Shown piece by piece: positions 7,216 to 30,763 of a stretch of 64,000 nt of DNA. Both the position numbers and the translations under genes were made by a program. Where the stretch lies: the NCBI GenBank assembly GCA_000708835.1, contig DF237075.1, positions 62,001 through 126,000 on the forward strand, written 5' to 3'. The notes under the pieces are model-generated. The model was not told where the DNA came from, searched no databases, and worked only from the letters and a program-made list of their open reading frames with translations. The DNA is from Klebsormidium nitens. Taxonomy: Eukaryota; Plantae; Klebsormidiophyceae. Numbering within the stretch: the first letter of the stretch is position 1; every line of letters starts with the position of its first letter.

Positions 7216-7683
7216 TTAAGAGTTATCGAGCTCTGGCTGAAGCGCATCCAGCACTTCTTGAGTCTCTGGAATCCTGCCGCTCTGCATCGGAGAGATACAT
7301 CGGAGTGAGCCCATACAGAAGTGACAGCCCCGCACAGTTCTTGAAGGAGTGAGCAACCAAGGCAGCGTCCGCTCTTTCAATTCTCTTTGCCTGGGCAGGC
7401 TGCTTCAGACGAAGATCCCTATGCAAATGGGCCCTTCCATCAGACTGAGGTGCTCTCCAACTCGAGAGTGCGTCACAACTTAGTTTCTAGGTTTTAACTA
7501 GCTCACCTCCAGCTTGGAGAACAAGACTTTGCCTCCCAAAGAAACCTCAAACGCTCCTTTGCGTGCTTCCGTCCCTTCAGGATTCCCAAGAACAATTACG
7601 GCTGGATACATGTCTTCAACCTCGTCCGCTAGTTTGATGAACTCGTTCAAAAAGTCCTCCTCTTCACAGTACTCCACAATAAC
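7216..7683 (-). CDS. Rdx family (SelT/SelW/SelH-like) thioredoxin-fold protein; 5' exons unresolved
   Basis: Exon 7683-7507 gives VIVEYCEEEDFLNEFIKLADEVEDMYPAVIVLGNPEGTEARKGAFEVSLGGKVLFSKLE. It splices in phase 0 to exon 7281-7216, SGRIPETQEVLDALQPELDNS*. The GAFEV, SKL and GRxP motifs are typical of the Rdx family. Confidence 0.85.
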
Positions 7684-9664: not shown

Positions 9665-12600
9665 ATGGATACAACTGAGAGCAAGGCCAGCAGTTCAAGA
9701 GCTGCTCCACCTCAAAGCGGAGACGTTGCAATTGTCGTGGACAAGAGCCCCCACTTAAGAGCAGGTAAGTGCCTGGCATTGGGATTTGCGTACTCAAAGG
9801 CTTCTTCAAATGACACATTTGGACTCCGCCCCTTAAGCTGCGCACATTGCCCTTCTCTTCTCATACGTTTCTCAAATTTGACGTCACTCATTACATTTGG
9901 GGGTTTCTCTGAATGGGTCAATCAAAAAGTGAGGAGAACTCTGATTTTTTGGATCCACGTCTCCGCACCCACTGAAAGAACTTCATTTACATCCTGCGGT
10001 CGAATCATTCAAACCTGAATCAGTCTCGTCATATTCCAGTTGTGGGACTTGGACTTGACTCTCATCAAGAACATTGCATCCTGCAGGGGAGAAGGAAGAG
10101 TTGCGGGAAGAGGCTGCGGAGCTGCTCGAAGACCTGAACGCCTTTTACTCCCGCTCCCCCGCCATCACAGAACGAGCATTGGAACTGACTGCTAGCACTT
10201 TGAACCGCCGCAAGAGCTTCGCCCTCAGTCACAGCCGGTTGAGTAACACTTCAGCTCCGGACAGCTCCAGAGAGGACGTTCACACCAGATCTCAGGGGCC
10301 TGATCATGGTGGTGAGAATGGGGCCCCCTCTCAGCCCCTCTTGGCAGACCACCGGCGAAGCGAAATGCTGGGGCTGGCGGCGCGGTATGAGAGTTTGTTA
10401 CAGTCCCTGGGGCATTCGAAAGAAGCGCAAAGGGTGGCAGAGTTTTGGCAGGGGGTGAAGGAGGTCTCTGCGGCCAATGGGGTGGCGCCAGGTGGCGGCG
10501 CCCAGGACGATGCGGACCTGCTGACAGGGATGGAAGCGTTGCTGAAGGACGGGCTCGTGCGGTTCCTGATGACTGTGAAACCGTTTCTGCCACCCTTCCC
10601 ATCCCAGGTGAATTTTTGAGGAATATACACGAGAGTAGCCTTGACATAGTCAACTGATAGGAAATCCTTTTGTCCTGAGCAAGGGATGGGGAAGGATCAA
10701 CGTTACCTGAACACATGGGGCTCACAGTCGCCGAGTCTGGACATCCAGGGTCTGTATACTATCTAGATCGTTGCTTGACTATCTGAAACTCTTGTATGAA
10801 GGGGCTAGTATCCTTTCTTCACCGTGCAGTTCAAACGTGGGACTAATTTGAGAGACACCTTGGCATCAATTCCAAGGCCCTTGGTGGAGCGAGGGATCAG
10901 CAAACTGCACTTTCCAGAAGATACACAGAAGGACTTTCTCAACGTGTAGCATTTACAATTTCTTGGTCTAGCTTGGTCTAGCTTGAGGGCAATGTGTTTG
11001 CGCCTGCAAATTCTGTTCTTTAAATCAGTTGCATTCAGAGCTTCGGTTGTCTGAACGTTCTTTTGCAGCTTATCGGTCTTTTCTCGTCTTGCAGATTGTA
11101 AAGTTTACAGACGTGAAGTACAGCACCCTCCTCCCCATCGATGACACACCTTATGACGACATGCTGACCAAGTTTGTGCCGTGTCTACGAAAGAAGGTCC
11201 CTACAGAGCGAGTCCCCGTTCTCTCAGGTACTCAACAGCTGGTTTTACCTTCCCTCTTGTTCATTATACAGTCTGCTGCTGACCTCATGAATTCAAAAGC
11301 ACAGACAGTCACTTCACTCTTGGACAATTGACAGATTCCTAAAGCTGGATAGGAACACAACTGATAGCAGCAGACGGCCCTTGTCTAACAAGGAAGTAGC
11401 TGTAAAACAAGGCATACTTGCGTGATTGATCATGATTCCCGCTCCTAATACTATTGACGTCTCTCGTTTCGCGAAAGTGTTTCTCGGGCTCAAAGTCCTC
11501 TTTCCCCTTCCTGAGTCAGGTGTGACCGGGTATCTGATGCCTGGTTCCTTGACGCTGTGCCTGGGGCCCCTCGCCTCTGGGCAAACCGCTCTGACCAAGA
11601 TCCTCGGGGGGCGTTCCTGGGTGGACAAGAAGACGTGGCACCAGTCGGGCTGTGTCACGTACAACGGGAAGAACCTGCGGGAGGTCCAGATCTCGAGGTG
11701 GGTTTCTGCGGCTTGCTAGTCTTCTGCATCTGTAAGGCGACATGACGGTGCTTATGACGTCAGCGCTACTGAATGATTGTAATGGCGTATGTCGCGCCAG
11801 CAAAGAAAGTGTATTGAGGTGTGACATTCTAGTCGTAGGCGACCAAGCAGGGCTCGTTAAGCAGGTTCGAGATCGCCCAGAATGCTTTCGATTCGATGCT
11901 GACGTCATGGGTTGTTATTGACGCTTGAATACAAGCGTCTGCCTTAGAGACTTTAATTCTGAGTTGGACGACAAGCTGCGCCATGCGCTAACGAGGTAGC
12001 GATGTTACTCAGGACTAGAAGCTCTGAGCCTGTCAAAAAATAATATCCGTATGGATGTGGGCTTTGAAATACAATCCAAAAAAGAAAAGGGATTGTTTGT
12101 GGGCTTTGAGATCGTGTTCCAAACGAGAGGTCTTCACCCACAAGTTTCCAGCATTCTTTGGAGTGAGGAAACGCCGCTGAAGCTGTCACGACAACCCACT
12201 TGTCCTGGCAATTTTGATCCATGTCCACGTTTTAGGTACTGTTGCGATCGGAGAATCGCCTCCAGTTTACTGCTTCAAGTATGACGTCCAAGAAAGCTGT
12301 CACCAGGTTGCCTTTTCCCAAGTTTTGCCGTTAACCCCCCGTCAAAACCTACAGGTTGGCCTCGTATGCGGGCCCGTATCCCAATCATCACCCGGCGCTT
12401 ACAGTGCGCGAAACGCTCGAGTTTGCACGGGACTGCTCCCAAGCCTTCAAGCCGTGGCACAGCGAGGACTTGCAAGAGGTCAGCGCTGTCTTTCTAGGCT
12501 CATCGGTCGTTTGGCTACGTTTATATATTTTGGGGACTGACGATGTCTGCTGTTCGTCGTTAAATTTATCTGTCCCCACGAGATTGTCAGGCTCAGGACA

Positions 12601-15600
12601 TTTGCAGCATGGCAGAGTGAAAGGCCAGCAAGCAAGGGAGCAAAATCAGAACGAGTTATTCCAACGGCATTTTTTCAAAGTAGTCCATTTAACGACAATT
12701 CGCCGGCCTTTTACGCTCCTTTCGAAGGCGTAAGCAAGTATTGATCACCGTGCACGTATTTCAAAGGAGCGGTTTTGACGGAATCTCTCAGCTGTACGAG
12801 CATTCGGGCTTTCTCTTCTGAGCTTTCCAGGTCGTTCGCACTTGAATGACGACTCACCAGTCGGCCGGAAACCTCTCAAAACGGCGCTTACGATGTCTGT
12901 GCTATGTTCAACCGTACAGCTTCAGGAAAAAGCCATAATGTTCAATTTAGGTTTTGGGAGTCTCTATTTTAGTATGCATTGGCGAGGTCTGACGTCAAGG
13001 TCGTGCTAAAATTTTAGTAACATTCTCTTGTCGCGTTCCCTCAAATAAAGTTGTATGCAGGATTCGAAGGCAGTGAAATTCGTGCATCAATATCTGCAGT
13101 AAAGCGAAATTTCAGTTCTGCGCAAAAGCAGCTACTGGCGCTGCACATATGCAGGTCTTCAATGAACTGGAGGGTCATTTTTTCAGGGCAACTGTTCAGA
13201 GTTACTCATCTGACCACCCTCTGACATATTTCCAACTTGTTTGTTTGCTAGGCTTTGGGTCTGCCCAAAGGCAGCAAGGCCCGGGCCGACGCCAAGACTG
13301 ACCTGATCATCAAGGTGCTGGGCCTGAAGGCGGTGGAGCACGTTCCGGTCGGGGCGCTCACGCCGGACGAGCTCCGGCGGCTCAGCATCGGGGAAATGCG
13401 GGCGGGGACGTATACCGGTACGGAACTCAGACTGGTCGTGCGATCGACCGTCGATTCGTCCGATCGGACGGTCGTTTTCATGTCGGCAACCCACAACTTT
13501 CAAAATTGATATATGAAGGATTTATGAATGGAAATTCCGCCCGGTCTGGTACGACTATACTTGAACAGGATCTGTTCTATAGTTCGTACACCCTGTCTGT
13601 GTTCTCCAACACTGACAAACTCCTCAACCAGGATGCGGAGATAAGACTTCCTCGCCTGAGCGCGAATACCTGCGTGGCTCCGCCCGGTTCTCCGGGTGGG
13701 GCTACTGCCTAATGAACGTCCCGCCGGCTCATTCCGCCGGCGGTTGACGGCTTGGAAGCGTTCTGACTGGTACCCACAATTTTTTGCCTTTTCAGATGTT
13801 GGCGTTTCGTGCTTCTGACCACTTTTATTGACTGACTGTCTAGCGTTGCTTGAAACCTCTTTTTGCTCTATCTTCAATGTGCTCCGTTTTCGGACCTCTT
13901 GTCTTTCTTGATACACTAGCTACCTAGCTCTCTCCCTATCTCCCTACAATATGATTCACATAATTGGGCATCATCGTTGCTCGCAACAAGTAATCCTCAT
14001 GACTAGAAAGGCAGCGGCTATCCTAAATTCCAGGCACCGGGCACCGGGCATGCAATCAATACACTTGCAAAACCACTTTTCAAATTCCCCCCACCCCTCA
14101 CTAAAAGAGCCTTCCAACCTTGAATTCATAAGCCGGATTTTGATGCTCAATTGCAGTACACTTGCATGACGATGTTGGGGTGGACTTCGACCCGGCCCTG
14201 GCTTTCGACATTGTGTCCATGCTCAAAGCCACGTCCCGCGTCTTCCAAACCGTCCAATGGGTCGCTTGCGACAACCTTTCAAGCGAGGTCTACAACCAAT
14301 TTGATCGGGTGGTGGTTCTGTAAGTCCCGGCCTTGCCATGAGACCTCACTTCCCCATGCATCTTCACGGCATTAATAAACCTGCCGACTTCGCCCCCTTC
14401 AATAATCTGGACATGTTTTACAGACGGCAGAATAATCAGGAACTTCCTGTTATTGCTCCTGGCTTGAGCGCCAAGCCCACACCTTTCCGAGGTAATCCTG
14501 ACAGATATGTATGTCTGCAACGTCTGCACAATTTTGTGTCAAATTACTCCATCTCCTTCGCCTTGAATGGGCCCAAGACGTGCCAGCTTGTCACCAGAGT
14601 TCTGCATCGATGCACCAGTCAACTGGTTACTGAAGACAACAGATCGGTATAGGAACTTGCAAAGCGCTGAAAGTTACCCCGCTCTGGTGGAGGAAAACCT
14701 AAAGGTTCAAACCCTTTTGCAGCAATGGTGGGCGCATCGTGTACCAAGGTCCCCGCCTGGACGCCCTGCTGTACTTTGAGCGACTGGGCTACTTTAAGCC
14801 CCAGCACGTGGAAGTGGCAGACTACCTCATGGTAGGATTTTGAAGCTCTCAAGCTAGAAAAACTCTCCAAAGACTCGCGGATGCAAAAGGACGATGAAGG
14901 GTCCTTGTGGACTGGTTGCTCAGAGTTTGCAATTTTATGCCGTGGGAAGGCCGAGACGGATCTGAGGTCCGGGCCTGGACGCTCTCACGAGAAATTGAGC
15001 GAGGACTTGAGGTCCTCAACCTGAAACGTGCTGCGTAATCAAGTCGTTCAATCCTCAAAAGCAAATGGTTCGTGGCTTTTCTGGATTCTGCACTCCATTA
15101 AATCTGTCGGCTGCAAAAGCTGATCCTTTTTGTCACTGGAGAAGAGGCGAAAGTAATTCCGGGGCAGAACTTCCTTTCTTGAATCAAGTCTGGTGCTGTG
15201 TCCAAGTCGGTTGCAGAGAACGTACCAACGACATAGCTGTGGAAAATAGGACAAGAGTCCAACCCTGACTCTAACATTGAATGGCCACGCTGCCAGAGAT
15301 TGGCACGGCCGCATGAGAAACTCAATGTACATTCGTCTGGCCAGAGTCTTGAGGCGAGTGAAAGACAGTCAATGGTGCACAAATCTGACAGGTTAGAACG
15401 AAGTGGACAGCTCCGCACCGAGCCAAGCCCAAAAGACCGAATACGAAAACATCTGGCGATCCGGCCTGATTCTTGTATCTTCACAGGAGGTCACCACTGC
15501 CGACGGTCATCAGTATTTGCGGCCAGGAGCGCAGGCGCTCGACGTCGACGGGTTTGTAGCTGAGTACGAACAAAGCCAACTGTACCAAGACGTGCGTCGG

Positions 15601-18600
15601 ATTGCGGAAAGTGAGAAAAGCAGGCACGTGTACTGGATGAAGCTGACGGACCCTAGCCAGGTCGCGTTTGAGGATGCTGACGTGTCAGATGACGGAGGAA
15701 AGGTGAGAAGTCGGAGAGGTTTGCTGCTTGCCTTGGTTCGTATCTTCATGAACAGAGTCAAGGACGGGGTTCGAACGCTAGCTGGAAGCTGAATCTACAG
15801 TACAGCCGGAAGCCTTACGTTTAGAAAGCGACAGGGTTGTCGACCGGGACGTACTGGGGGGGTCTCGGCCGTCATGTCTGCAAACGCACCGAACACATGA
15901 ACAGCTTGCAGTCAGACTCTTAAGTCCCGATCGAGCATCGTGACCGTGGCGCGAAGGGCGACAATCTCCTAGAACACGACTGCCTTGATCACGCCGGTAT
16001 CATAGCCCAAGAAGCGGACGATCCTCGAGCCCGCTTTTCTTTGGGGATTGCGAACTTCTCACCGGAACCCTTAACCATGCCTTTCGCCTTCATTTCAGAC
16101 CATCAAAACGCTGCCCGCCATCTCATGGCTGGACGACGCCCTTGTCAGCGAGTGCAGCCTGGACCGGACGTCCGAACCGCACCTTGGCGACGTGGTGTCC
16201 GGCGTCCGGATCGGAAATGAGACGTTCCGCTACCTGGCGGTGGGCGACCACGACTCCAGCGCTGCGGGCTTGATGGTCGCCCTCAAGGGGGCGGAGGGCG
16301 ACGTCTGGCTGCAGCTGGAACGGCCGCTCTCGAAGGTAAGAGGAGATGGCTGGCGGACCGAAATACGGGCCATATTGTGTTCGGCGGGTATCCCTTTCGC
16401 CAGACTTGATGAGTTGGTCGGTTCGATTCGTAATCTGAAGCACAGATTGGAAAGTACCTTTCTGGCGCCCAAGTACCTAGTGTCGTCGACAGCGGCTGAG
16501 CTTTGGCTACCTCAACGTCCTCGACCTTCCAGTTCTCATTCTCCTACGAGGGCACTTTTCGTAACCAAGATCTATGACGACACAACACCGTGTATTTCTG
16601 GACGTCGAGGAATCGAACTTTCGTCACCCGATTGCTGTAACTTCGAAACCGCTAAACGCGTTGCTCACAAGCAGTGACGTCCTTGCAGCCAGCCTCTCGT
16701 AAGCCCTGGCACTACGTCCAGAACAAGCTGCTGAGGTTCCAGCGCCTGCAATTCGAGCTGATGAGATTAAACCCACAACTCCTGAACCGCACGTCAGTAG
16801 TCACAAAGCTTGCTGACAAGCAATACCGTTCGTGGGACGACGATCGTCTCTCAGATTCATTCACAACAGAAGCCAAGCAGAAGAGACTATGCTCTGCACC
16901 CCAGTTCACTCTTACTCCCCTACTAATCCTCTTGCAGTTCTTCAGTATCGTTAAATCGTACTTATATGCACATTATTCTATGCTTCCGATTTCAGGTCGA
17001 CGGCGTGCTGCCACGTCAGTGGACGCAGAAATACGTACAGCCGTTCTGGCCGTCCACGAGGCGCGTGCTGCACCGCCAGTGGCTCGTCACCATACGCAAC
17101 AAGACGGCGATCAAGGCGCGGCTTATCCAGGTACGCAACAAGGGAATCGTAGACAATCTTGAATCATTCCCGCTTCCGGTCTCCTTTTTAGACAGGGGTA
17201 TGTTGGAGCACTTTCCGTCTTGCAGGACTCTCCGCTGGCGCCACTCTGTAACCAAAGTGGAACTGGTAGCTATTGGACAGCAGCTATTGGACTGCTTATG
17301 CTGGCAACGATAACATAAGGCTGACTGCAGGTTGCGGGCCTTGAGGGACCTGTATCTCGAATTCCCAGGTCGTTCTTGGAAAGGTCCTTCTTTAGAGCGT
17401 TCCTGCGCGTATAGATTCGAGACTGAACCCAGCGCTCATCACGGCTCTCTCTTCCTAACGGGACGCTACTACTCTTCTGCGGCAGCATGTCGTTGGAATT
17501 TTCTGTCGCTCAATCTTGCGAACCTGCCGGACGCTCTTTCCATCTCTCCGGCGCTTTGTCGCTCTTCGGACGTCTTACTGCAAGTCCGACACGCCTGTCC
17601 CCTTCTGTCAGATGCTTCGCTGCCCTTTCGGACGCTTTAGCGTTTTTTCGGACGCCTGTCCCGTTTTCTCGAGATGCTTCTTTGCCTTTTCGGACGCTTC
17701 GCTGCTCTTTCGGACGCCTGTCCCTCTCTCCCAGATGCTTCTTTACTCTTTCGGACGCTTCGCTGCTCGTCCGGACGCCTGACACGCTCTCATCGGACAG
17801 GTGATCATTTTGGGCATCTTTGCGGGCACGTTGCTGTACCAAAAGTCGCTGCGGCCGCCGACCACCGTTCTGCTGGGCCTGCGCAAGGCGGCACCTTTCA
17901 TCGCCATCCTAGTTATCTTCCTGGGCGCGCTCGCGCAAGTTCCTGGCCAGGTAAACACTAATGTTATTCAGTTTAGGTTACTTCTGTTTTCAAGCCGTTG
18001 ATTCCTCTGCGTAGTCAGGTTAACTTACTTTTACTCGCCTACTTCAAGCCCTTTCAACCAAGCTCTCGGACCCGTGAATACCGAGACGCGTCTATCTTAG
18101 GAAGGCTCACTTCTTTTGTAAGCAGTACTCTACCTGATTGGATCCCGCTTCAAACTGACCGGTTCTAATCCTCCCCATGGCAGAGTGACCAAGACGAGGA
18201 CCTGAAATATTGGCGCCCCCGGTCCCTCTCAATGGGCTAAGACTAAGTGATCTGTTCGGGACCGAAACCAGGATGGCAAGTCTTTCTCTTTTATTGCGCA
18301 GATGGTTGAGCGCGCCATCTATTACAAGCACCACGCGCAGGGCTTCTACCGCGCCTCCTCGTACGTGCTCGCGGCGTTCGCCTGCAACGCGCCCCTGGTC
18401 GCCATGGAGGTGAGCAGGACGTTGGTTGACACTTTTCTTCGGGTCACTGAGACCTCATCGCGCTCGGAGACAAGGTTGCTCTCGAGTTCTTGTGAGGAAT
18501 CAAGAGACTGCAAACAGAACTTAGAAACTGAGGTTTTTTGCTGGAAAGTTTAGCTTCTCTCTACTACCAATCGCGTTCGCGGGTCTCATCCCCCAAATAT

Positions 18601-21600
18601 TGACTTCCGCTTCTTGCTTCGAGTAACAACATGTCCAGTTTATCGATCAATGTGTCAGGAGTAGACGCCACATTTGGAAATCCTTGTACCCGACAGCTCG
18701 TAAATCTTGACTTTTATCCATGAACCCCTACAACAGGACCACCCACAAACCCAGTCGTCTGCTCCCTTTGCGAATTCTAGTGTATGCCTGCCTGCACATG
18801 TATGTGGCTTCTTTACTCCGTCCACTTTGAGCCCTTTACTCTCCTTACTTTGGTTCCTTAGAACTTAAGAACCAACCATCTTACAAGGCCAGACAGCTTA
18901 GCCCCCCAAACCCGCAGGTTCTGATGTACGGCTGCCAGCTCCACTTCCTGACGGGCTGTCACCTTTACAGCCAGAGCCTGTCAGATTTATAAATGCACAG
19001 AGCATTCGCTCCGTCTCCTGCAAACCCATGACTGTTATGATAGAATAATCCACAAGACCCCAGAAACTTGACCTCCCCTAACCCGGAGGTTCTGGTGTAC
19101 GGCTGCCTGCTCTACTTTCTGACGGGCGGCAGCCTGTACGACCACTGGGCGCCGATCTTCGTCTTCCTGGTGCTCCTCTACATGTCCGGCACCATCGGCG
19201 CGTCCATGGTCCGCATGCTGACGTCATGCCTAGAATCAGCGGCCGCGGTCAACCAGATTGCAGGTGCCGACTCTTAAATCGATCTCGTGTCAGGGCGTCG
19301 CCTCCATTCGATTGATTTCGGTTCTTTTCAGCTGCAGATAGTGATCTGATTTGGGTTCTCTTCAATTGTGATCATGATTAGCCACTCTTCCCTTACGTGA
19401 CAAAGATTTGCTGGGACAGGTTTTGAAGAAGATGGATGCGGACCGGCTGACTTGGTCTTTACGAACACGACTTCGTCTTTCGTCGCAACCTCCGTAGCCG
19501 ATCACTCTAATGTCGATGGCTGGCGACTGTAAACTTACGTCGCTGGGAAAGCAGATTGATTCGCAACATTCTGGGAACAACCGGTCGAGAAGAAAAGGCT
19601 CCGTCATACACCAAATGGTCATTTGAAGCTTCGAACACTTCATTGTGCATCGTCTGAAATTGAGTTTTTCGAAAGCGTGAACTTTTGGCGAGAGCTGAAA
19701 TTTTCGGCAATTCCGCGTTGTCAGCTGCCTCGCTCCTGTGTTGACCTCTCACCAACGCTTCCTCGTGCGCTACAGGTATTTTGATTGGTCTCTTCATTGT
19801 CTTCGCCGGTTTCCTCATCCCCCTACACATTATGCCCAACTGGTGGTAAGGCAGTCTTCCTCTGTGTTGCAGTCTTTGCATCCTTACACCCCTCTATATC
19901 TAATCCTCTCTTCTTTCCGCGTCTTCACCCCGTCCTTTCAACACACTATGACTGGTGGTCAGACCGAGTCCCAAGCGGTTGACTTTTGCAACCTTCTCTT
20001 GTTCCTGCCAACGTCACGTTGCTAACATCGGCCGAGCTACTTCTTGGTGGGCGGAACAGTTTAACTAGCCTTGCTGCATGTGGATCTTCATGTGGTCCTT
20101 AAACGCCAGCTTACTAAATCTAGCCCACTTTGACCAATTTGTTTTACGATATGTCGGCGACTGTGACACGTCAAAGTTCGGACTCTATGGCAAACCGTCC
20201 CTGCAACACCTGAAAAGCGACCGCATCTGTAAATGCTGACGTCATATCCTGATGGAGAGCTGACGACGCATCCCTTCTGTCCGATGACGTCAGGTTCTGG
20301 TTCTACTACCTGTCACCGATGCAATGGATAATCACGGGGCTCATGATCAACGAGTTTCGCAGCGGCCGCTACGACCAGATCTGCGGCGACTACCCGCCCG
20401 CGCTTCTCGCTGTGGTGGGTCTCAGTAGCTCTGCTTGACCGCAAATGGATTTTGCATTCAGCGCTGAATTAACGCAAATAGAGCCTATCGAAACACACCT
20501 AAACAAGCACAGTCAACTTGAAATGAGACCATCTTCGGACCAATACTTCCATGTTAGTCCAGACCGTCACCCGTCCCCGTGCGAGCCCCCACCTCGCTTG
20601 TTCCACGTAGACGCTTGTGAAGGCTTCTTTTGCACTCACGTTGGGATCCCGGTCCTATGAAGACACCTACCGGTGAGCCACTCTTTGGGCGCCAGAGTGG
20701 CTCTAGCGGTGGCTTCTAGCGCGGCTCTGAAGAAAGTCGGCTAGAATAGTAACCATTTGTGGTTCTAGCGGTGAAATATGGATTCGCGGTTGGGGATACA
20801 GGTTGCTTGACCAGTGGCATTGGCATCATGAGAAGATGGTTTAGAAGAAAGGTCTACCAAGGAGTCCACCTATGAAGCTACCAGTGACAGAACCTTTAAT
20901 CCGTGGAGACCACGCATAAACCCAGAGCTTAAGCTGTCTCCCACAGCTGCCGTACTGCCGGGGCGCCAATCTGGACAGGGTTGAGGGCGCGGCGTACCTC
21001 AACTTCTACTGAATCCATGTAGCAAACCACCTCCAAACCCACTTGTAAAACCGTCTATGAACCCACCTGCAAACCCGGAAACTCACCCATAAACCCGATC
21101 CTTAACCCCTTTCCCAGCTGCCCTAATGCCGGGGCGCCAACCTGGACACGAGCGTGGGCGAGGAGTACCTCAAGTGCTACTCGATCCAGTAGCAAACCCA
21201 TCTGTAAACCCACCTGTGAACCCTTCTGTAAACTCACACATTAACCCGATTCTTTACCCCTTTCGCAGCTGCCCTACTGCCGGGCCGCCAACCTGGGAAA
21301 GAGCGTGGGCGAGGCCTACCTCAATTTCTATCCGCTTCCGTAATTGCTCATTCACAAACCCGCCTGTACACCGGTCTATACACCCACCTGTAAACCCGTC
21401 TGTAAACCCACCTTTAAGCCGGAAAGTCAACCATAGACCCGATCCTCAACCCGTTGTGCAGCTGCCCTACTGCCAGCTGGGCGCCAATCTGGGGAAGAGC
21501 GTGGGCGAGACCTACCTCAAGTAGTACTCAAGCCAGTGGCAAACCCACATGTAAACCTACCTGTAAACCCACCTGTAAACCCGTCTGTAAAGTTGAGTGT

Positions 21601-24600
21601 AGAGACGTTCTCCCCCCCATAATGCAATTTCTTAGCTCCTTTTGCAGCTACCGTACTGCCGGGGCCCCAAACCTGGACAAGAGCGTCGGCGAGGGCTACC
21701 TCAATTTCTACTCAATCTGGTAGCAAACCCACCTGTAAACCCGTCTGTAAACTCAACTTCATAACCCTAAACCCTATTTCCTCTCCGCCAGCTGCCGTAT
21801 TGCCGAGGCGCAAATCTGAACAAGAGCGTGGGCGAGGCGTATCTCGACTTCAACTCAATTCAGTACCGCAAGTGGTGGCTCGGAATCTGCTTCGCGGTGC
21901 TCGTGGTGTTTGTACTGGGGTTCCAGTTCCTGGCGTGGCTAGGGCTCAAGTACGTCAGCTTCCCGGAGAAGCTCAACCAGCGCATCTCGCTCGCCGGCTT
22001 CCTGGTAAGGCTGCTGACTCGTGCCCCTTAACCCAGGGGAGTGTTCGACACTTCCGGCAAAGCCGGGGAGTACGCTAGATCGTCGAAACAGCATCTCGTC
22101 GAGATCCTTAGGATTTGCACCTTCTGAAGTGCAGACTGGCCGTGCAACAATTTGGATGCGGGGTTAAACGGCCCGAGTCAGGCGGTTGCGCAAATGCGGG
22201 CGTTGCCCTGCTTTTTGGCAGCCTGGACTTAAGGAAACGGACCGCATCATCTAACCCAGCGTTCCAAAGGCTATCTTTTTAGCTGTGCGTGTTGAGGAGC
22301 CAAATTGTTTCAGCACTGCTTGGTCAGCTGGCGACAGCTTGAATGCTGATCGTATTCGTCAATAGGACGTTGCGATTTGTTTTGAAGTCCATCGTCTCAA
22401 GCCGGTGAAGGCCCTTTGAAAAGTTGCGTGTCACAGACACGTTCGAGTGCGGATCCCGATTAGCGACACGATTGATTGGCAGGGTAAGACGGCGCGGACA
22501 GGTCTAAACACAAGTCTTTAGCGTCCAAATCATCAGCTTCGTTGCGTTGTCCATTCCCAACCGCTAAAAAAAGCACAGCAGTTTTTGAAAGAGTCGTTGA
22601 TCTGTGCAGCAAACGCGGCGCTTCGGAAAAAGAGCAGAGGTACCACAGCCGACTGAATGGCAGACGGTGCAGCCCCCTAAAGCCAACGGCTCAGAGCACG
22701 CGGGCCACACGGCAGAGGCGCTTGTGGTGAGTCGCTCAGAGTTCGCGTCTCTGAACGTTTTGCGGCGCTCTCGCTTGGAACATAGTTCCATCTATGTTCA
22801 TCGAGTATCTGGTCGAGAGTAGCCGCAAAGACTACTGCCGCATCTAGTAACGACTGAACGAATGCGAAGCTAGCCAGTTCGTCGCACACTGACGGATTCC
22901 TAGAGATTCGGCTTGCGGGCAAGAATTGAGAAAGCACCGAAGGTTTAAGTGGCTTGCATTGTCGGAAGCTGAACACGTGTTCTGCAGGTCAAAGCGGCCG
23001 CGTTGCCCGCCTTCCAGCCCGTCACGCTGTCGTGGCATGACGTCAGCTCCGAGGTGCCCATCCCCAATTTTAAGGACCCGCGAGTCGTGCTGAGCCACGT
23101 GTCAGGCTGGGCCAAGGTGAATATTGCCATCTATAGATCTGCTGCCTCCAGGCGCCTGCATATCCACAAGGCGGATCGCCCAGTCTAAACCGTTCGAGCA
23201 TGCCTCTGAAACAATCGCTCAGACTCGAAAACGTCGCACCGAAAAGTGTCATCACCGATCACGAACATCGAGATCGTGTAGGACGAATGTCGCTGTGTTC
23301 AGCGGATGTCTTTGTGACGCCACCTCAGCTACTCCAGGTTTCGTCTCACATCACTCGCGGTGTTCGCGCCCTCAGAGTAAGAGTTGATTACTCGACGAAT
23401 CAGAGTTGGTGCGTTTTTACACCACCCAAAAGCCCCAATCCGGTCTTTCCAAGATCCAAGTTCAGACCACTATTTTTAACACATTTCCTCGGTCTGCAGC
23501 CCGGTACGATGACGGCCATCATGGGCGTGAAGGGGTCGGGGAAGACGGTCCTGATGGACATTCTGGCCGGGAGGAACACCCCGGGCAGGACCAAGGGCAG
23601 CATACTGGTGAGCAACAGCGGGAAAAGCACCCGGGGAGTGATGAACCGATGATATGAGTCTTAAGCGACTTGATTCTGAGAGCTACGTATTGGCGAGCGC
23701 TTGCAATAAGTACGAAATTCAAAAGATCCGAGTCGAAATTCGGAGGAAGCCTTGGAAGCCTTGGGACTGGTTTTCTCGCGTGTCAAGCAAGCCATATGAG
23801 CCGCCGTTAAACATTTGACATGTTGATCGGACAATCCTCGAGCAAGATTGTATGTATTGCTTCGCTTCGAGCGGCGGCTCTAGCTGACGTTATAAATCTC
23901 CGCTGCTGCGTCCGCCGAAGTGACGTTACTCTCGTGTAGGTGAACGGCTACCCCCGCGACGTGGACACGTTCCGGCGGGTTCGCGGTTACGTGTCGCCTT
24001 CGGACGTCCACCCGGCGTACGCAACCGTCCGAGAGTGCGTCCAATTCAGCGCCAAGCTGCGGCTGCCGCGGAACACGACGCCCGAGAAACGAGAGGCGCT
24101 CGTTTCAGAGGTGAGAAATCGTCGATTGCGGAACAGAGCTGCTCGTGCGGACGTCAGGTTGTGAAGGAGAGGCTGCAGAGGGAAGCGGTTGCCGAGATGA
24201 CGAGTATTGAAAGATTACACGGAGGAGCATCGATAAGACTTTCCGTTCAAGCTTTGTGATATCTTGGTATTGAGTCTTGAGGCTTTTCAGAAACAGAGAT
24301 TTCGCGCAATTTTGCATAGATGTGTTGGTGGGATGACTTTCCCGGACCATTAGGGTCCTATCCAATCGAGGGGGTATTGCATTGCAAGTGTTGTGACTTC
24401 GTTCCTCAATCACAGCCGCATGTTCTAATCTTGACCGCACGCCTTACTTTCAAAACCCATGTTGCAGTTTCTGAAAGGGCCCCATCTCTGACCGAAGAAA
24501 GTCACCCTTAAGGAATGCAGGAAGGTCTGATCCACTCCGCAAGTCTCAATCCTTCCCAACCGTGCGACGACACTCGACGCATACGTTGACGCGGAACCAG

Positions 24601-27600
24601 CGTTTTGTGGAAACACGCTTCTTCACCCTACCCGCAGGTGCTAACCATAACGGGCCTTTTGGCCACTGCGGCCCAGGAGTTTCGTCAAACCCGGTCTTTA
24701 ACCTCACCCGCAGGTGCTAACCCTGACCGGCCTCTCGGCCACTGCGGCCAGAACCTTCGGCAAACTCGATTTTTAACCCTACCCGCAGGTTCTAACCCTA
24801 ACCGGCCTCGCGGCCAGCGCGGCCCACCTGGTAGGCACCCCGGGCACCAACGGCCTGGACCCGGAGCAACTCCGCCGCCTCTCGTTAGCGGTCGGGTTAG
24901 TCACTAACCCCGCGGTTAACTTCGTCGACGAGCCGGACAAGAACCTCGACCCGCAGGCGGCGCGCAGAATCGTCGCGTGCAATCACGCGGTTGCCAAGAG
25001 CGGACGGACCGTAATTTCGACGCTGAACCACCCGGTGGGACGGATTCTGGGTGTGTTCGACCGGTTGTTGCTGCTGAAGAGGGGCGGGGAAACGACCTAC
25101 TGGGGGCCGGTCGGGGGGCTCGCGTGCACAGACGCTGTCGTGAGTGGTTTGAAATTTTCAGTTTTTTGATTTTCTAAAGTTCTTTATTACTTTTTGTAAC
25201 TTTTTCTAGTGCTGAGAAGAGGGCTGAAAGGATGTCTACCGACCTACTGGGGGCCGGTCGGGGGGCTCGCGTGTGCGGACGCTGTAGTGAGTGCTTTTCA
25301 AGCTTGTAGCGTTGGGACGAACATTACTGAAACGGGGTAGCTTTGCCCGCGTCTGTCAAGACGGTATAACGAGTGAGGAGGTTTTTCCATACAAATTGAT
25401 TTAACGCACACGTACCGGTGTGAAAGCGGGCCTTGCTCGCTTGCTACTGTTTCTACGTCAATCAAATTCTGTTCCCCTTTCAGGGCCGTTACGGCTCGTC
25501 TCCCACTTGTGTGGATCCTATTTACATCCTGCTACGAATCTCACTGAATGAAGGAGAAGCCGGTCCAAAGCTCTCCATCAGATCAAAGGATCGATACATC
25601 CCTTCTTCTAATACGTGCGACTCCTCTTCGCGCATCACATTCTTGCCACCCTCCGCCAAAGGAGCATTCCTGACGTCTCCTCTGCCGCTGTGATCAAAAG
25701 GTTATGGCAGCCCATTCTTTTGTCCCCCGTCTGCGAATGTTCCCTCACACATCTCCGCCGCCTTCCGCTAGGGCTACTTCGAGCGCATCCCTGGCACTCT
25801 CCCCTGCGGCTTCAGCGAGAACCCGGCCGACTACCTCATCGAGTGCATCGGTGGCGGTCTGCGCCAGCGAACGGACCGCGACTATTCTTTCGACTACCGC
25901 CACAGCGTACTCGCAGCGGAATCCGCGGCGGAATTGAGGGTCTTAAGGCGGTCCAAGGGCCAAGCGGGGCCGAACCTGGTAGAGAAGGGGTACGCTGCGC
26001 CAATGAGCACCATCTACAAAGAGGTGAGGTTTCGGGCACCTTTTCTTATGTTTTCTTGCTATGCGATGGTTATTCTCAACCTTGTCTGCCGAGTACGTTC
26101 CGTTTCTTGTCCACTAGTCGGTTATCTTATGCAGGCTTCGGCTGAATCTCTTTCGCTCAGAGAGAAAGTTCCTTGCTTCTCCAAAATTTTTGCTTCCCCA
26201 AAGCACCTGGTAGTGTTGTATTCTTTGCGCCGTACTGTAGTCCAGATTTGAGTGTCCTGCGCTGCAGATTGGAGCAGCATATCTGCAGCCGGTCTTTCTG
26301 CACAGTACCGACGTCCTTCCTCGCACGCGCAACACCTTTTGCAACTTCGGATACATGCTGAGGTCAGCACGTCCCCATTGCTGACGTCGTTTCTCCGTAT
26401 CTCCCAGGTACTCTTGCGCGCGCAGCGCACCTACTTCCGCAACCTGTCTTACAGCTTCGGCCGCGTGACGTCAGCGATCCTGCTGGGGCTCATCTTCGGG
26501 AGCGTCTTCTGGCAGATGCCGTACACGACCATCGTGCGCAGCGGCGCGCGGGGGGGCGTCATATACATAAGCACGCTGCTGATGACCATAGGCAGTGCGA
26601 CGGTGGTGATCCTGGAGCTCAATAAGGAGCGCCCCGTGTACGACCGGGAGAGGAGCCACCGGATGTACCCCGCGCTTGCGTGGAGCTTGGGATGGGGGCT
26701 CGCGGAGGTGAGACGCCCTATCGTTTTGGAGGGCTCATTTTGAGGAGACCCTGAAACCCCCGCAGATGCCACTGGTTCCACGAAGGTGAGGCGCTTTCGC
26801 TTTGGGTAAGTCTCAATCTGAGAACCAATGACAAGTGCATGAAGAGTAACGTGAGTCTACCAGGCTGAATCATTCAGAAGCCCAATCCATACATGTACTC
26901 ACGCGCTCAACACCCGAACCTACCATGACTTCCCAGTGAAACACAGGCGTCCCCCGGGCTTGAAGCCAACATTCATACGGCTTATCAATTTAGAAACGAG
27001 ACTATCCGCTATGGTAGGGTGGTGGTGACTGAAGAAGACCAATCCCAGTTGAGAGCGAAGCAACTCAGAATATGTATTTGTGTGTACTCGACTGCCAAGT
27101 GGTCAAAGGAAACCAATAAGAGGACTTTTCTTTACTGCATAAGTGCCATCGGCTGTCAAAACAGCTCGTCGACTCGCAACCTTCGCGGCAATAAAGGTGT
27201 TTGGAGGCCCTTCTTAACTCATCCGAAACCTTTCTGCCCCGCGTTTTCTTAAAGACTACATACGCATGACCGTGGAACATGGACCTTTTAAACCGAAATC
27301 CTGACCGCTTGCACGATTCAGCGCAACCTATGTGACCGTTCCAAATCCACCTTCCGAGACAATCGCCGAACGTCCCTTTCGGTCCCGCATGTCAACTGCC
27401 TTCCCACCAGAACCGCATCAGTGTAGTTCGCGCTTCTCAAAGTGCTTTTGAGTAAGCCAATAACTAATCGGTTTCCGTCCTTCGTTCAGATCCCGTACAT
27501 CGCGGTGTCGTTCCTGTTCCACTGCGCCATCCTGTGCTTGATGACCAACATCGCCACGGACAGCGCGGCCAGCTTCTTCGAGTTCTGGTTCACGCTCTGC

Positions 27601-29636: not shown

Positions 29637-30763
29637 AGAAGCAAGAAGGGCATGGCCCCCGACTGATATATGCGCGCATCTTACTTAGTGTTGCAGCGCT
29701 TTGGTGGATTTTTCTCTGTCGACTTGTACAAGAGAGGAGGGGGTGTGGATGTTAATCGATCAGGGCTCGAATAACGTGCGCCTAACATAGCAAGTGGATA
29801 TCGAAGGTGGGCCAGCTACTGAAAGTGCTACGAGAAGCTGACGGGTTATGATGAGGTCATGGAACGGTGATTTGTGTACGTTGTGGAAGCGACAAAAGGA
29901 GGTAGGTATTTTGATCAACAACTGTGCTAGGCGGCTGCCGGAGAAGAACATGCTTGCACTTAACAATTGCGGTGTCTAAAGACGACGAAATATTCAGATT
30001 TCGACCGCAAATTACAAGAAACGACTGGATTAAGGCGCGAATGTTGATTCTTTGATTGCCAGGACGTCAGGCGTGTTGCGCTGCCGATGATCACGTACGT
30101 TGTGCATGGATTTCAGGCATGATGGTCGGCAACTTTTGATGGATGTGATCCGACGGATACTTCTCATGACCTTTTCAGGATGGCTCAGTCTAAGACGATC
30201 CGCCCCAATTAGGCACCATGATGGATCAGGAAACCAATTCACAATGTCTGAGCCTACGACATTCCAGACCCTCCAATAGGTTTAAGGCCGGCCATATTGG
30301 CCTCGTTTACAATGCTGGCCCGGTCCAGATTGAATCTCAATGCCCACCATGCACCAGCCACCAATGGCAACACAGTGCATGTTGAATGTGCACGCGAGTG
30401 CGAAGATAGACAGCCTCAGACGCCTATTTAACTGTATGTACAACTGTAGCATAGGTAGGCTTGCTTCCTTCGGCGCTGGACGGGCTCACTTCCGATCTGG
30501 TTTATAACCTGTGGACGTAACCGATGGTTATGTTTTGGACGTAACCGAGCAAGACCAGTCTAGAAGAAGTACCGCGAGCCTAGCAGTGCAGCGTTCTCAT
30601 ACGGAGGGTTTTCCACGTTCACCCGTTCAATGTTAACCAAAATCTTCGTATTTGTGTTCACACGATCTACCTTGGCTCTGTTCAGGTTGTGCTGAGTTTG
30701 CGATCGACGCTTTCACAGCATTCGCAAGCTGCACAGCGCACTTATCAAATCAAGGCATCCAAA

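What the first reader, a model, noticed from the sequence alone, without database searches (positions are those of the whole stretch)
11520..25139. Intact full-size PDR transporter whose ATPase motifs are degenerate at both composite sites
NBD1: Walker A is GPLASGQT (CAA at 11582-11584 where Lys is expected); Q-loop SYAGP; signature LTPDE instead of ISGGQ; Walker B/D-loop VHLHDDVGVDFD instead of LFMDEISTGLD. NBD2: Walker A (GVKGSGKT) and Walker B (VNFVDE) are kept, but the Q-loop is GYVSP, the signature is LDPEQ, the D-loop is PDKNLD and the H-loop is TLNHP (canonical TIHQP). In known PDRs the site formed by NBD2 Walker A/B plus the NBD1 signature is the hydrolytic one; here its signature, Gln and His are all changed. 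Yet 28 exons stay in frame across ~20 kb. I infer a non-pumping ABC protein, such as an ATP-binding channel, sensor or regulator, analogous in concept to SUR or CFTR.
Basis: partly seen in the sequence, partly recalled or inferred. Interest (0 to 1): 0.8.

Follow-up and report, generated by a model that had tools for sequence, protein, structure and literature searches.

The report
Algal ABCG transporter with crippled ATPase motifs
A green-lineage alga expresses and conserves a full-size ABCG (PDR-type) membrane protein that has lost most of the residues such pumps use to burn ATP, at both ATP sites, so it probably no longer works as an ordinary pump.

Summary
The gene runs on the + strand from 9665 to 29633. 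I model 27 coding exons and 1,612 aa, not 28 exons. The order is NBD1, a PDZ-like insert, TMD1, NBD2, TMD2.

- **Expression:** spliced RNA contigs from four runs in two studies join the NBD1 exons exactly. No alternative canonical exons appear.
- **Orthologue:** metagenome and Logan contigs carry a syntenic orthologue with the same exon lengths and nearly all the same motif changes.
- **Selection:** dN/dS is 0.15 over 1,172 codons and 0.11 for NBD1, so this is not a pseudogene.
- **Sister proteins:** the closest full-length relatives (Riccia, Chlorokybus, Closterium) share the insert but have fully canonical motifs. The degenerate clade sits on a long stem.
- **Where the changes fall:** 15 of 38 near-invariant NBD1 positions and 21 of 75 in NBD2 are changed, against 0-5 in controls. 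The TMDs look normal.
- **What NBD2 keeps:** the Walker A Lys and the Walker B Asp-Glu.

"Non-pumping" is plausible but not shown. First readers flagged the same pattern on another piece of this genome (s1-290912); I did not check it. The joined protein went to no search or fold tool.

The parts
9665..9764 (+). Exon 1 (inferred start codon, N-terminal extension)
   Evidence: First ATG of the open frame, with a good GT donor at 9765 that joins in frame to exon 2. It is not conserved at the DNA level in the orthologue, and the 5' end is not confirmed.
10087..10607 (+). Exon 2 (N-terminal region before NBD1)
   Evidence: Its 3' end matches the loose end of the RNA contigs that continue into exon 3. 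It is 67-68% identical in DNA to L003 and L004, with indels.
11095..11227 (+). Exon 3 (start of NBD1)
   Evidence: Spliced RNA contigs in X6, X8, X10 and X11. The orthologue has the same length and AG/GT borders.
11520..11697 (+). Exon 4: NBD1 Walker A GPLASGQT (11564-11587; Gln codon 11582-11584)
   Evidence: RNA joints 11227|11520 and 11697|12355. The motif is identical in P0151, P0152 and P0153.
12355..12478 (+). Exon 5: NBD1 Q-loop SYAGP (12362-12376), Gln replaced by Pro
   Evidence: RNA joints. Conserved in L003. Canonical relatives have Q here.
13252..13417 (+). Exon 6: NBD1 signature LTPDE (13357-13371) in place of [VI]SGG[EQ]
   Evidence: RNA joints. Identical in L003. Canonical relatives have VSGGE or ISGGQ. 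The exon alone finds no ABC chain in the PDB.
14157..14319 (+). Exon 7: NBD1 Walker B HLHDD (Glu to Asp), D-loop VGVDFD, H-loop region VACDNL (14261-14278)
   Evidence: RNA joints. L003 has VHLHDD, AGIDLD and VAADHI. There is a weak match to Cdr1 NBD1 residues 332-376.
14723..14831 (+). Exon 8 (end of NBD1)
   Evidence: RNA joints. Weak Pfam ABC2_membrane_7 hit. Conserved in L003.
15487..15702 (+). Exon 9 (linker and first part of the insert)
   Evidence: RNA joints. The L003 homologue has indels.
16099..16335 (+). Exon 10: PDZ-like insert between NBD1 and TMD1
   Evidence: RNA contigs. The insert is shared with the Riccia, Chlorokybus and Closterium relatives. The fold model has pLDDT 69.8, and its weak Foldseek rows are mostly PDZ domains with best E 0.42.
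16996..17130 (+). Exon 11 (elbow helix, start of TMD1)
   Evidence: Its 5' end matches the RNA contig loose end. L003 has the same length and borders.
17801..17950 (+). Exon 12 (TMD1)
   Evidence: Frame-keeping GT/AG model. 85% identical in DNA, with the same length and borders, in L003, L006 and L008.
18272..18409 (+). Exon 13 (TMD1); 5' boundary uncertain
   Evidence: Pfam ABC2_membrane hit. Conservation with the orthologues starts only at about 18299, and the projected acceptor is not AG there.
19089..19263 (+). Exon 14 (TMD1)
   Evidence: Model. Conserved in L003, L006 and L008. A decayed copy of its acceptor and first 56 nt lies at 18889-18973.
19776..19845 (+). Exon 15 (TMD1)
   Evidence: Model. 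Same length and borders in the orthologues.
20294..20414 (+). Exon 16 (TMD1, extracellular loop)
   Evidence: Model. Same length and borders in the orthologues.
21792..22004 (+). Exon 17 (last TM helix of TMD1)
   Evidence: Model. Conserved in L006 and L008.
22988..23116 (+). Exon 18 (start of NBD2)
   Evidence: Model. Conserved in L006 and L008.
23500..23607 (+). Exon 19: NBD2 Walker A GVKGSGKT (23524-23547), Lys kept
   Evidence: Pfam ABC_tran at E 1.8e-6. The orthologues have GVKASGKS, which still fits GxxxxGK[ST].
23940..24110 (+). Exon 20: NBD2 Q-loop GYVSP (23985-23999), Gln replaced by Pro
   Evidence: Model. The orthologues have GHVTH, so the Gln is absent in all copies. Canonical relatives have GY[VC]EQ.
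24789..25139 (+). Exon 21: NBD2 signature LDPEQ (24855-24869), Walker B VNFVDE (24915-24932), D-loop PDKNLD (24933-24950), H-loop TLNHP (25020-25034)
   Evidence: Aligns to Cdr1/Pdr5 NBD2. The same motifs occur in P0001, L001, L006 and L008, with TLDHP for the H-loop. dN/dS is 0.16.
25772..26023 (+). Exon 22 (end of NBD2, linker)
   Evidence: Model. Conserved in L001, L006 and L008.
26408..26707 (+). Exon 23 (TMD2)
   Evidence: Pfam ABC2_membrane at E 2.1e-15. 86-87% identical in DNA in the orthologues.
27490..27663 (+). Exon 24 (TMD2)
   Evidence: Model. Conserved in the orthologues. A copy of the exon end plus donor lies at 27738-27800.
28335..28444 (+). Exon 25 (TMD2)
   Evidence: Pfam ABC2_membrane hit. 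Conserved in the orthologues.
28906..29029 (+). Exon 26 (Cys-rich extracellular loop of TMD2)
   Evidence: Model. Conserved in L006 and L008. Aligns with Closterium and Chlorokybus.
29466..29636 (+). Exon 27 (last TM helix, C-terminus, stop codon 29634-29636)
   Evidence: The acceptor is conserved in L006, with 88% amino-acid identity. The C-terminus aligns without gaps to P0038 and P0070.

Best explanation
This is a real, transcribed and selectively maintained gene. It is a narrow, lineage-restricted offshoot of a streptophyte subfamily of full-size ABCG (PDR-type) proteins. That subfamily carries a PDZ-like insert between NBD1 and TMD1.

On the stem of this offshoot the ATPase engine was remodelled, while the membrane domains evolved at about the normal pace.

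- Site 1 (NBD1 P-loop plus NBD2 signature) is dead. The Walker A Lys is Gln, the catalytic Glu is Asp, the Q-loop Gln is Pro, there is no H-loop His, and the partner signature reads LDPEQ.
- Site 2 (NBD2 P-loop plus NBD1 signature) keeps only the P-loop Lys/Thr and the Walker B Asp-Glu. It has lost the signature Gly-Gly (LTPDE), the Q-loop Gln, the H-loop His at its usual position and the SGLD D-loop.

Inferred mechanism: the protein can at most bind one MgATP, at NBD2, and turns it over very slowly or not at all. The NBD pair would then act as a slow nucleotide switch or a static clamp rather than a motor. The conserved ABCG membrane domain would work as a gated passive pathway, a receptor or a regulator, and the PDZ-like insert would offer a docking surface.

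Shown here: gene structure, expression, orthology, purifying selection, the derived state of the motifs, and acceleration specific to the NBDs. Inferred only: loss of fast hydrolysis and any non-pump role.
For: - Spliced RNA contigs from four runs in two studies join exons 3-10 at GT..AG borders. They show no alternative exons.
- The 27-exon frame is open for 1,612 aa.
- The orthologous gene lies on L003 and L006, with a second copy on L008. It has the same exon lengths and borders. It is syntenic on both sides: an Rdx-family gene upstream and an AhpC/redoxin gene downstream.
- dN/dS is 0.106 for NBD1 (291 codons), 0.166 for the NBD2 core and 0.146 over 1,172 codons, with dS 0.79.
- Most degenerate motifs are identical in the orthologues; the D-loop and H-loop regions vary slightly.
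- The sisters P0030 (Riccia fluitans KAL2652756.1), P0070 (Chlorokybus) and P0038 (Closterium) share the insert and have fully canonical motifs.
- In the tree these form a six-row clade with 100% support. The degenerate clade has a stem of 1.15 changes per site, against 0.35-0.51 for the sister end branches.
- Identity to the sisters is 36-42% in NBD1 and 44-46% in NBD2. The sisters among themselves show 55-72% and 62-67%. The TMDs lose far less: TMD1 is 34-37% against 38-45%, and TMD2 is 38-49% against 46-61%.
- At near-invariant positions, 15 of 38 (NBD1) and 21 of 75 (NBD2) are changed, against 1 of 11 and 2 of 13 in the TMDs. Controls change 0-5. Of the 36 changed NBD positions, 24 carry the same derived residue in the orthologue.
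- In Pdr5, NBS2 catalysis uses the Walker A Lys, Q951, E1036, H1068 and the NBD1 signature VSGGE (PMC8421411).
- A D-loop mutation turned TAP (ABCB2/B3) into a facilitator that lost directionality (PMC7756269).
Against:
- NBD2 keeps the Walker A Lys/Thr and the catalytic Glu, which is what a working site needs most.
- A conserved His sits one residue after the lost H-loop His (TL[N/D]HP) and might substitute for it.
- Single H-loop and Q-loop mutants of Pdr5 keep activity (my own knowledge; the titles appear in reference lists).
- Keeping four key NBD2 residues is not statistically informative. It would happen about 27% of the time at the observed stem change rate.
- Only the NBD1 half was checked against RNA.
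- The orthologue set is shallow. It has four or five close sequences from one narrow clade.
Confidence: 0.5

Rival explanations
1. It is still an ATP-driven pump. Site 1 is a fungal-PDR-like dead site. Site 2 hydrolyses ATP through a non-canonical arrangement: the P-loop Lys, the Walker B Asp-Glu, a His shifted by one position, and an Asp/Glu-rich signature.
For: - The Walker A GxxxxGK[ST] and Walker B D-E of NBD2 are kept in all copies, and the P-loop changes seen are ones the motif allows.
- A His is conserved at H-loop position +1.
- The TMDs are strongly conserved, with dN/dS 0.12-0.16.
- Pdr5 works with one dead site (PMC8421411).
Against: - Four separate elements of site 2 are changed at once: the signature Gly-Gly, the Q-loop Gln, the H-loop His and the D-loop.
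- None of the 149 other nearest representatives lacks the H-loop His, and nearly all keep the Q-loop Gln.
- The Q-loop position is not even fixed among the orthologues (Pro in the window, His in the relatives). That is odd for a catalytic residue.
Confidence: 0.3
2. It is a nucleotide-independent scaffold. Neither site binds ATP. The acidic residues gained in both signature loops (LTPDE, LDPEQ) sit against the opposite P-loops and hold the NBDs together permanently.
For: - Both signatures gained a Pro and an Asp in parallel (G390P, G391D and S1143D). These changes are conserved in the orthologue.
- Both D-loops were also rewritten.
Against: - This rests on sequence alone; no model of the joined protein was made.
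- The intact NBD2 P-loop would then have no reason to stay canonical.
Confidence: 0.12
3. It is a decaying or recently dead gene (pseudogene), or the degenerate motifs are artefacts of a wrong gene model.
For: - Pfam ABC_tran fails on every NBD1 exon.
- Several RNA runs of the same species hold almost none of its words.
Against: - The frame stays open across 27 exons.
- Transcripts are spliced at exactly these exons.
- Exon lengths and AG/GT borders are kept in three further copies with no stops.
- dN/dS is 0.15 at dS 0.79, and 0.066 between L006 and L008.
Confidence: 0.03

Closest known systems
Insert-bearing full-size ABCGs of streptophytes: Riccia fluitans KAL2652756.1 (P0030), Chlorokybus atmophyticus Chrsp234S03598 (P0070), Closterium CAI5462083.1 (P0038). 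These may be the 'V1-type' full-size ABCGs of Cho et al. 2020 (PMC8359288); I did not test that equation.
   Same: - Same domain order.
- Same insert between NBD1 and TMD1, ending in the LQLER(P) motif.
- Same Cys-rich last extracellular loop and C-terminus.
- They form a 100%-supported clade with this protein.
   Different: All three have canonical Walker A, Q-loop, signature, Walker B and D-loop in both NBDs, and a canonical H-loop in NBD2. This protein is changed at nearly all of them and sits on a stem two to three times longer.
Fungal PDR pumps Pdr5 / Cdr1 (PDB 7P03-7P06, 9S2C, 9IUK)
   Same: - (NBD-TMD)2 ABCG fold. NBD2 aligns at E 1e-15.
- Site 1 is dead in a similar way: the Walker A Lys is lost, the catalytic Glu is lost, there is no H-loop His, and the NBD2 signature deviates (LNVEQ in the fungi, LDPEQ here) (PMC8421411).
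   Different: - In Pdr5 the second site is fully canonical (VSGGE, Q951, E1036, H1068). Here it has lost the signature, the Gln, the His and the D-loop.
- The site 1 decay arose independently, because the streptophyte sisters are canonical.
- The fungal pumps have no PDZ-like insert.
CFTR (ABCC7) and SUR1/2 (ABCC8/9): ABC proteins used as a channel and as channel regulators
   Same: The concept only: an ABC exporter fold whose nucleotide sites serve gating or regulation rather than uphill transport. In both, site 1 is degenerate (PMC7756269).
   Different: - They belong to a different subfamily and fold type (ABCC, type IV, versus ABCG, type V).
- They keep a competent site 2.
- No homology beyond the NBD.
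- Nothing here shows channel or regulator activity.
ABCG5/ABCG8 sterol transporter
   Same: An ABCG fold with one non-consensus site. That site has changes in the signature and in the Walker A Lys (Lys to Arg) (PMC7756269).
   Different: It is a heterodimer of half-transporters, and one site stays catalytic.

Membership tests
Full-size ABCG / PDR-type ABC protein | Reverse domain order NBD-TMD-NBD-TMD on one chain | tested here: met
   The exon order places NBD1 at 11095-14831, TMD1 at 16996-22004, NBD2 at 22988-26023 and TMD2 at 26408-29633. The protein is collinear with 1,400-1,630 aa full-size ABCGs.
Full-size ABCG / PDR-type ABC protein | ABC-2 type (type V) membrane domains | tested here: met
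   Pfam PF01061 ABC2_membrane hits exon 23 at E 2.1e-15. It also hits exons 13, 24 and 25 below the curated cut-off.
Full-size ABCG / PDR-type ABC protein | Phylogenetic placement inside full-size ABCGs | tested here: met
   The protein falls in a 100%-supported clade with the Riccia, Chlorokybus and Closterium full-size ABCGs. The tree had 25 rows and used the quick method with SH-aLRT support only.
Catalytically competent ABC ATPase (at least one consensus site) | Walker A Lys, Walker B Asp plus catalytic Glu in one NBD | tested here: met
   NBD2 has GVKGSGKT and VNFVDE, and the orthologues keep both. NBD1 fails: Lys is Gln and Glu is Asp.
Catalytically competent ABC ATPase (at least one consensus site) | Signature LSGGQ-type loop from the partner NBD facing that P-loop | tested here: not met
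   The NBD1 signature is LTPDE where all eight aligned relatives have [VI]SGG[EQ]. The changes G390P and G391D are conserved in the orthologue.
Catalytically competent ABC ATPase (at least one consensus site) | Q-loop Gln and H-loop His in the NBD that holds the P-loop | tested here: not met
   The NBD2 Q-loop is GYVSP (GHVTH in the orthologues). The H-loop is TLNHP or TLDHP. Of the other 149 nearest representatives, all keep the His.
Catalytically competent ABC ATPase (at least one consensus site) | Measured ATP binding and hydrolysis | not testable with these tools
   This needs purified protein. The joined model also could not be sent to the fold tools.
Insert-bearing streptophyte full-size ABCG subfamily | Insert of about 150 aa between NBD1 and TMD1 with a GD[VI]-x-x-[VL] core, ending in LQLER(P) | tested here: met
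   BLASTP of the insert against P0030, P0070 and P0038 gives E 9e-13 to 7.5e-7.
PDZ domain (for the insert) | PDZ fold recognisable by profile or structure | tested here: inconclusive
   Pfam gives no hit. The exon 10 model has pLDDT 69.8. Foldseek against the PDB has a best E of 0.42, yet most of the top 50 rows are PDZ domains, with TM-scores around 0.3-0.55.
CFTR / SUR-type regulatory ABC protein | ABCC-type (type IV) TMDs, an R-domain or TMD0, and a partner channel | tested here: not met
   The TMDs are ABC-2 type, and the nearest solved chains are all ABCG or PDR. The resemblance is conceptual only.

The most novel reading that the evidence does not exclude
The ABCG fold has been turned into a pseudo-ATPase. 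The Asp residues gained in both signature loops act as built-in phosphate mimics and latch the two NBDs without nucleotide, or with one permanently bound ATP at NBD2. The conserved membrane domain would then serve as a passive, ligand- or partner-gated conduit or receptor, tethered through its PDZ-like insert. This would be the first ABCG-type counterpart of the CFTR/SUR idea. It arose within streptophyte algae from canonical pumps.
Probability: 0.15. Interest if true: 0.8.

Novelty: new variant of a known kind. Interest (0 to 1): 0.6.

Why it matters
ABC exporters with one degenerate site are common. In full-length human ABC proteins the degenerate site is always site 1 (PMC7756269). My literature searches found no description of a full-size ABCG with the consensus site also stripped.

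Here such a protein is expressed and held under purifying selection, and it sits next to canonical sisters from Chlorokybus, Closterium and a liverwort. That gives a natural before-and-after pair. It can be used to ask which NBD residues an ABCG fold needs when it stops acting as a motor, and what else the fold can do.

It also warns annotators. Pfam ABC_tran misses the whole of NBD1, so a pipeline could report this protein as a half-transporter or as fragments.

Tried and rejected
- **Pfam on single exons.** No NBD1 exon reaches ABC_tran. This is useful as a measure of divergence, not as evidence against homology.
- **PDB phmmer with single exons.** The NBD1 signature exon found no ABC chain. 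The Walker B/H-loop exon matched Cdr1 only at E 1.5.
- **Exon-level word searches.** They returned only fragments of orthologues. I could not fetch canonical paralogues from the same genome, so I could not test whether this alga also keeps canonical insert-bearing copies. Earlier notes list three more insert-bearing ABCG loci; I did not check them.
- **First-pass 28th exon, 29159-29264.** Rejected. It has no homologue in L006 or L008. Exon 26 joins in frame to a conserved acceptor at 29466, and the result aligns without gaps to Closterium and Chlorokybus.
- **Decoy acceptor at 18918.** It has a better CAG than the real exon 14 acceptor. I considered it as an alternative exon and dropped it because its frame stops after about 25 codons.
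- **The 1,983 nt that one RNA contig carries upstream of exon 3.** This is more than exons 1-2 can supply. The only conserved upstream blocks belong to a minus-strand Rdx-family gene, so the contig probably merges neighbouring transcripts. I found no further N-terminal coding exon.
- **Paper search for the run and metagenome ids.** Nothing found.
- **Read laying.** It allows one call of 6 kb, so only the NBD1 half was laid on RNA. The NBD2 exons rest on conservation.
- **The joined spliced protein.** I used it only inside local scripts (BLAST, MAFFT and IQ-TREE against proteins already fetched).

Full report
**Gene and model**

The window has about 52% G+C. Between about 9.6 and 29.6 kb on the + strand lies one multi-exon gene. 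Stop-free segments in the three + frames spell a full-size ABCG protein.

Pfam run on single exons gave the following:
- ABC_tran only on the NBD2 Walker A exon (E 1.8e-6).
- ABC2_membrane in both membrane halves (best E 2.1e-15).
- Nothing on any NBD1 exon.

I built the model from three sources: frame-keeping GT/AG pairs, RNA joints, and conservation in related contigs. The final model has 27 coding exons, runs 9665-29633 and encodes 1,612 aa.

A first-pass exon at 29159-29264 was dropped. Exon 26 ends in phase 0 and joins a conserved acceptor at 29466. With that join the C-terminus aligns without gaps to the Closterium and Chlorokybus proteins. The start codon and the exon 13 acceptor remain inferred.

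**The observation**

| Element | NBD1 | NBD2 |
|---|---|---|
| Walker A | GPLASGQT (Gln codon CAA at 11582-11584) | GVKGSGKT |
| Q-loop | SYAGP | GYVSP |
| Signature | LTPDE | LDPEQ |
| Walker B | VHLHDD | VNFVDE |
| D-loop | VGVDFD | PDKNLD |
| H-loop | VACDNL | TLNHP |

The NBD2 exon aligns to NBD2 of Cdr1 and Pdr5 at E about 1e-15, motif against motif. In an alignment with eight canonical full-size ABCGs, every one of these positions lines up with the consensus residue it replaces.

**Expression**

RNA-type runs of the same organism hold 12-21% of the sampled words of a 6-kb stretch over NBD1. That is about the exon share of the stretch.

Contigs from four such runs, in two studies, were laid on the stretch. 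They join 11227|11520, 11697|12355, 12478|13252, 13417|14157, 14319|14723, 14831|15487 and 15702|16099, all GT..AG. Their loose ends match exon 2 upstream and exon 11 downstream.

So the mRNA carries the degenerate NBD1 exons, and no alternative exon appears in these contigs. Other RNA runs of the species hold almost none of the words. That fits low or condition-dependent expression but proves nothing.

**Relatives and selection**

A search of the 1.84-billion-representative library with the NBD2 exon gave one close hit. It is a 109-aa fragment, 85% identical, with the same LDPEQ, PDKNLD and TLDHP. Everything else was 50% identical or less.

Exon-level searches and contig look-ups then brought in genomic DNA of the relative:
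- L003 and L004 cover exons 2-16.
- L001 covers exons 21-25.
- L006 and L008 cover exons 12-27.
- The sources are two Logan runs and two JGI metagenomes.

Only the exons align with the window, at 75-89% DNA identity; the introns do not. Exon lengths and AG/GT borders are the same almost everywhere.

The locus is syntenic on both sides. A minus-strand Rdx-family gene lies upstream and an AhpC/redoxin gene downstream. I therefore treat L003/L006 as the orthologue. L008 is a second copy, about 83% identical to L006 including introns, with dS 0.16.

dN/dS values:

| Comparison | Codons | dN/dS | dS |
|---|---|---|---|
| NBD1, window vs L003 | 291 | 0.106 | 1.07 |
| NBD2 core, window vs L006 | 210 | 0.166 | 0.73 |
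| TMD parts, window vs L006 | 134-236 | 0.12-0.16 | 0.52-1.02 |
| All comparable codons | 1,172 | 0.146 | 0.79 |
| L006 vs L008 | 707 | 0.066 | 0.16 |

No copy has a stop.

Motif conservation in the orthologues:
- Identical: GPLASGQT, SYAGP, LTPDE, VHLHDD, LDPEQ and PDKNLD.
- H-loop: TLNHP in the window and TLDHP in the relatives.
- NBD2 Q-loop: Pro in the window and His in the relatives, so the Gln is absent in all.
- NBD2 Walker A: GVKGSGKT in the window and GVKASGKS in the relatives. Both fit GxxxxGK[ST].

This removes the pseudogene reading and the relaxed-selection route to refutation.

**Where it comes from**

I joined the exons only inside local scripts. With that model, the best full-length relatives among the fetched proteins are P0030, P0070 and P0038. 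Their sources name them as Riccia fluitans KAL2652756.1, a Chlorokybus atmophyticus protein and a Closterium protein.

They share the insert between NBD1 and TMD1 (E 9e-13 to 7.5e-7), the Cys-rich last loop and the C-terminus. All have canonical motifs.

In a maximum-likelihood tree of 25 rows, the window protein and its two orthologue rows form a 100%-supported group. That group sits inside a 100%-supported six-row clade with these three. Its stem is 1.15 changes per site, against 0.35-0.51 for the sister end branches. The crown branches are short, 0.01-0.12. This was the quick method with SH-aLRT support only, and the order inside the six-row clade is unresolved.

The extra divergence is concentrated in the NBDs:

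| Domain | Sisters among themselves | This protein vs sisters |
|---|---|---|
| NBD1 | 55-72% | 36-42% |
| NBD2 | 62-67% | 44-46% |
| TMD1 | 38-45% | 34-37% |
| TMD2 | 46-61% | 38-49% |

I also counted changes at positions at least 90% invariant in 22 canonical proteins:

| Domain | Changed in this protein | Changed in six leave-one-out controls |
|---|---|---|
| NBD1 | 15 of 38 | 0-1 |
| NBD2 | 21 of 75 | 0-5 |
| TMD1 | 1 of 11 | 0-2 |
| TMD2 | 2 of 13 | 0-2 |

Of the 36 changed NBD positions, 24 carry the same derived residue in the orthologue. The pattern is a burst of change in the ATPase engine followed by constraint, which is what one expects after a shift of function.

The nearest relatives being streptophytes suggests that the alga is a streptophyte (charophyte-type) alga. 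That is an inference. Cho et al. 2020 describe an early-diverged 'V1-type' of full-size ABCGs in charophytes, bryophytes, Selaginella and Amborella (PMC8359288). This subfamily may be that type, but I did not test it.

**How it probably works**

In Pdr5, NBS1 (NBD1 motifs plus the NBD2 signature LNVEQ) is inactive. NBS2 is catalytic and uses the Walker A Lys, Q951, E1036, H1068 and the NBD1 signature VSGGE (PMC8421411).

Site 1 of this protein has decayed in the same way as the fungal one. It did so independently, because the streptophyte sisters are canonical.

The unusual part is site 2. It keeps the P-loop Lys/Thr and the Walker B Asp-Glu. It has lost the Gly-Gly of the partner signature (G390P, G391D), the Q-loop Gln, the His at the H-loop position and the SGLD D-loop.

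My best reading, at about 0.5, is that fast hydrolysis is gone. NBD2 would bind one MgATP at most and serve as a slow switch or clamp. The well-conserved membrane domain would act as a gated passive pathway, receptor or regulator. One precedent for part of this: a D-loop mutation alone turned TAP into a facilitator that lost directionality (PMC7756269).

The main rival, at about 0.3, is a pump with one non-canonical but working site. Three things favour it: the retained catalytic Glu, the conserved His one residue downstream (TL[N/D]HP), and the tolerance of Pdr5 to single H-loop or Q-loop changes. That last point is my own knowledge; I saw the papers only as reference-list titles.

Keeping four key NBD2 residues is not statistically telling. 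At the stem's change rate for invariant positions it would happen about 27% of the time.

A third reading, at about 0.12, is that neither site binds nucleotide. In it, the Asp residues gained in both signature loops latch the NBDs together.

**The insert**

Exon 10, aligned with the orthologue and three sisters, folds with pLDDT 69.8. Foldseek against the PDB finds nothing significant (best E 0.42). Most of the top 50 weak rows are PDZ domains, with TM-scores around 0.3-0.55. 'PDZ-like' is therefore suggestive only. The insert belongs to the whole subfamily, not to the degenerate branch alone.

**Novelty**

One-site degeneracy is ordinary. In full-length human ABC proteins it is always NBS1 (PMC7756269). 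My paper searches found no description of a full-size ABCG with both composite sites stripped and held under selection.

I rate this as a new variant of a known kind. It is known so far only from this genome and a few close relatives in public reads and metagenomes.

First readers of this scan noted the same pattern on another piece of this genome (s1-290912, beside the insert note s1-290911). I could not read that DNA. It may be a paralogue or a duplicate contig.

**Limits**

- There is no biochemistry and no structure of the whole protein.
- RNA support covers exons 2-11 only.
- The orthologue set is narrow.
- The composite orthologue joins contigs from two metagenome samples. Their overlapping exons 12-16 gave identical hit values, so they appear to be the same sequence.

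Noticed in passing
window 17591-17791; 18889-18973 and 19060-19144; 20908-21865; 24611-24826; 25093-25150 and 25240-25297; 27607-27669 and 27738-27800: Several introns of this gene hold head-to-tail, partly decayed copies of their own exon-intron borders, with either the acceptor plus the exon start or the exon end plus the donor. The 17591-17791 array is intron-only repeats just upstream of the exon 12 acceptor. Some copies keep a better splice site than the one used, for example CAG at 18918 against GAG at 19089. The orthologues have similar partial exon copies in their introns (L003 exon 12, L001 exons 21 and 22, L006 exon 24). This matches earlier notes on this genome (s1-316218, s1-267568, s1-334354).
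   Followed up: partly
window 15487-16335: An insert of about 150 aa lies between NBD1 and TMD1. It is shared with the Riccia, Chlorokybus and Closterium full-size ABCGs. The fold model of exon 10 gives only weak matches, but they are mostly to PDZ domains.
   Followed up: partly
window about 7500-8400 (minus strand) and 30762-31530: The neighbouring genes are conserved in synteny with the metagenome orthologue. Upstream is an Rdx-family (selenoprotein W/T/H-like, PF10262) gene on the minus strand. Downstream is an AhpC-TSA/redoxin gene.
   Followed up: partly
L006 compared with L008 (JGI sample 3300060284): Two contigs in the same metagenome carry copies of the gene. They are about 83% identical through the introns (dS 0.16, dN/dS 0.066) and lose similarity about 600 nt after the stop codon. 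They could be two related taxa or a recent segmental duplication.
   Followed up: partly
L003 10927-10928 and L004 3212-3213: The intron after exon 5 starts with GC in the orthologue (GC-AG intron), where the window has GT.
   Followed up: no
window 8300-9664: One RNA contig carries 1,983 nt upstream of exon 3, about 1.36 kb more than exons 1-2 supply. It probably merges the 5' UTR with the head-to-head neighbour's transcript, so the true transcription start and start codon are open.
   Followed up: partly
window 11259-11487 and 14382-14573: Low-depth RNA contigs lie wholly inside introns 3 and 7. They are probably unspliced precursor or retained introns.
   Followed up: no
window 28906-29029: The last extracellular loop is Cys-rich, with seven Cys in 41 aa. 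Most of the Cys positions are shared with Closterium and Chlorokybus, which suggests a disulfide-stabilised outer domain typical of this subfamily.
   Followed up: no
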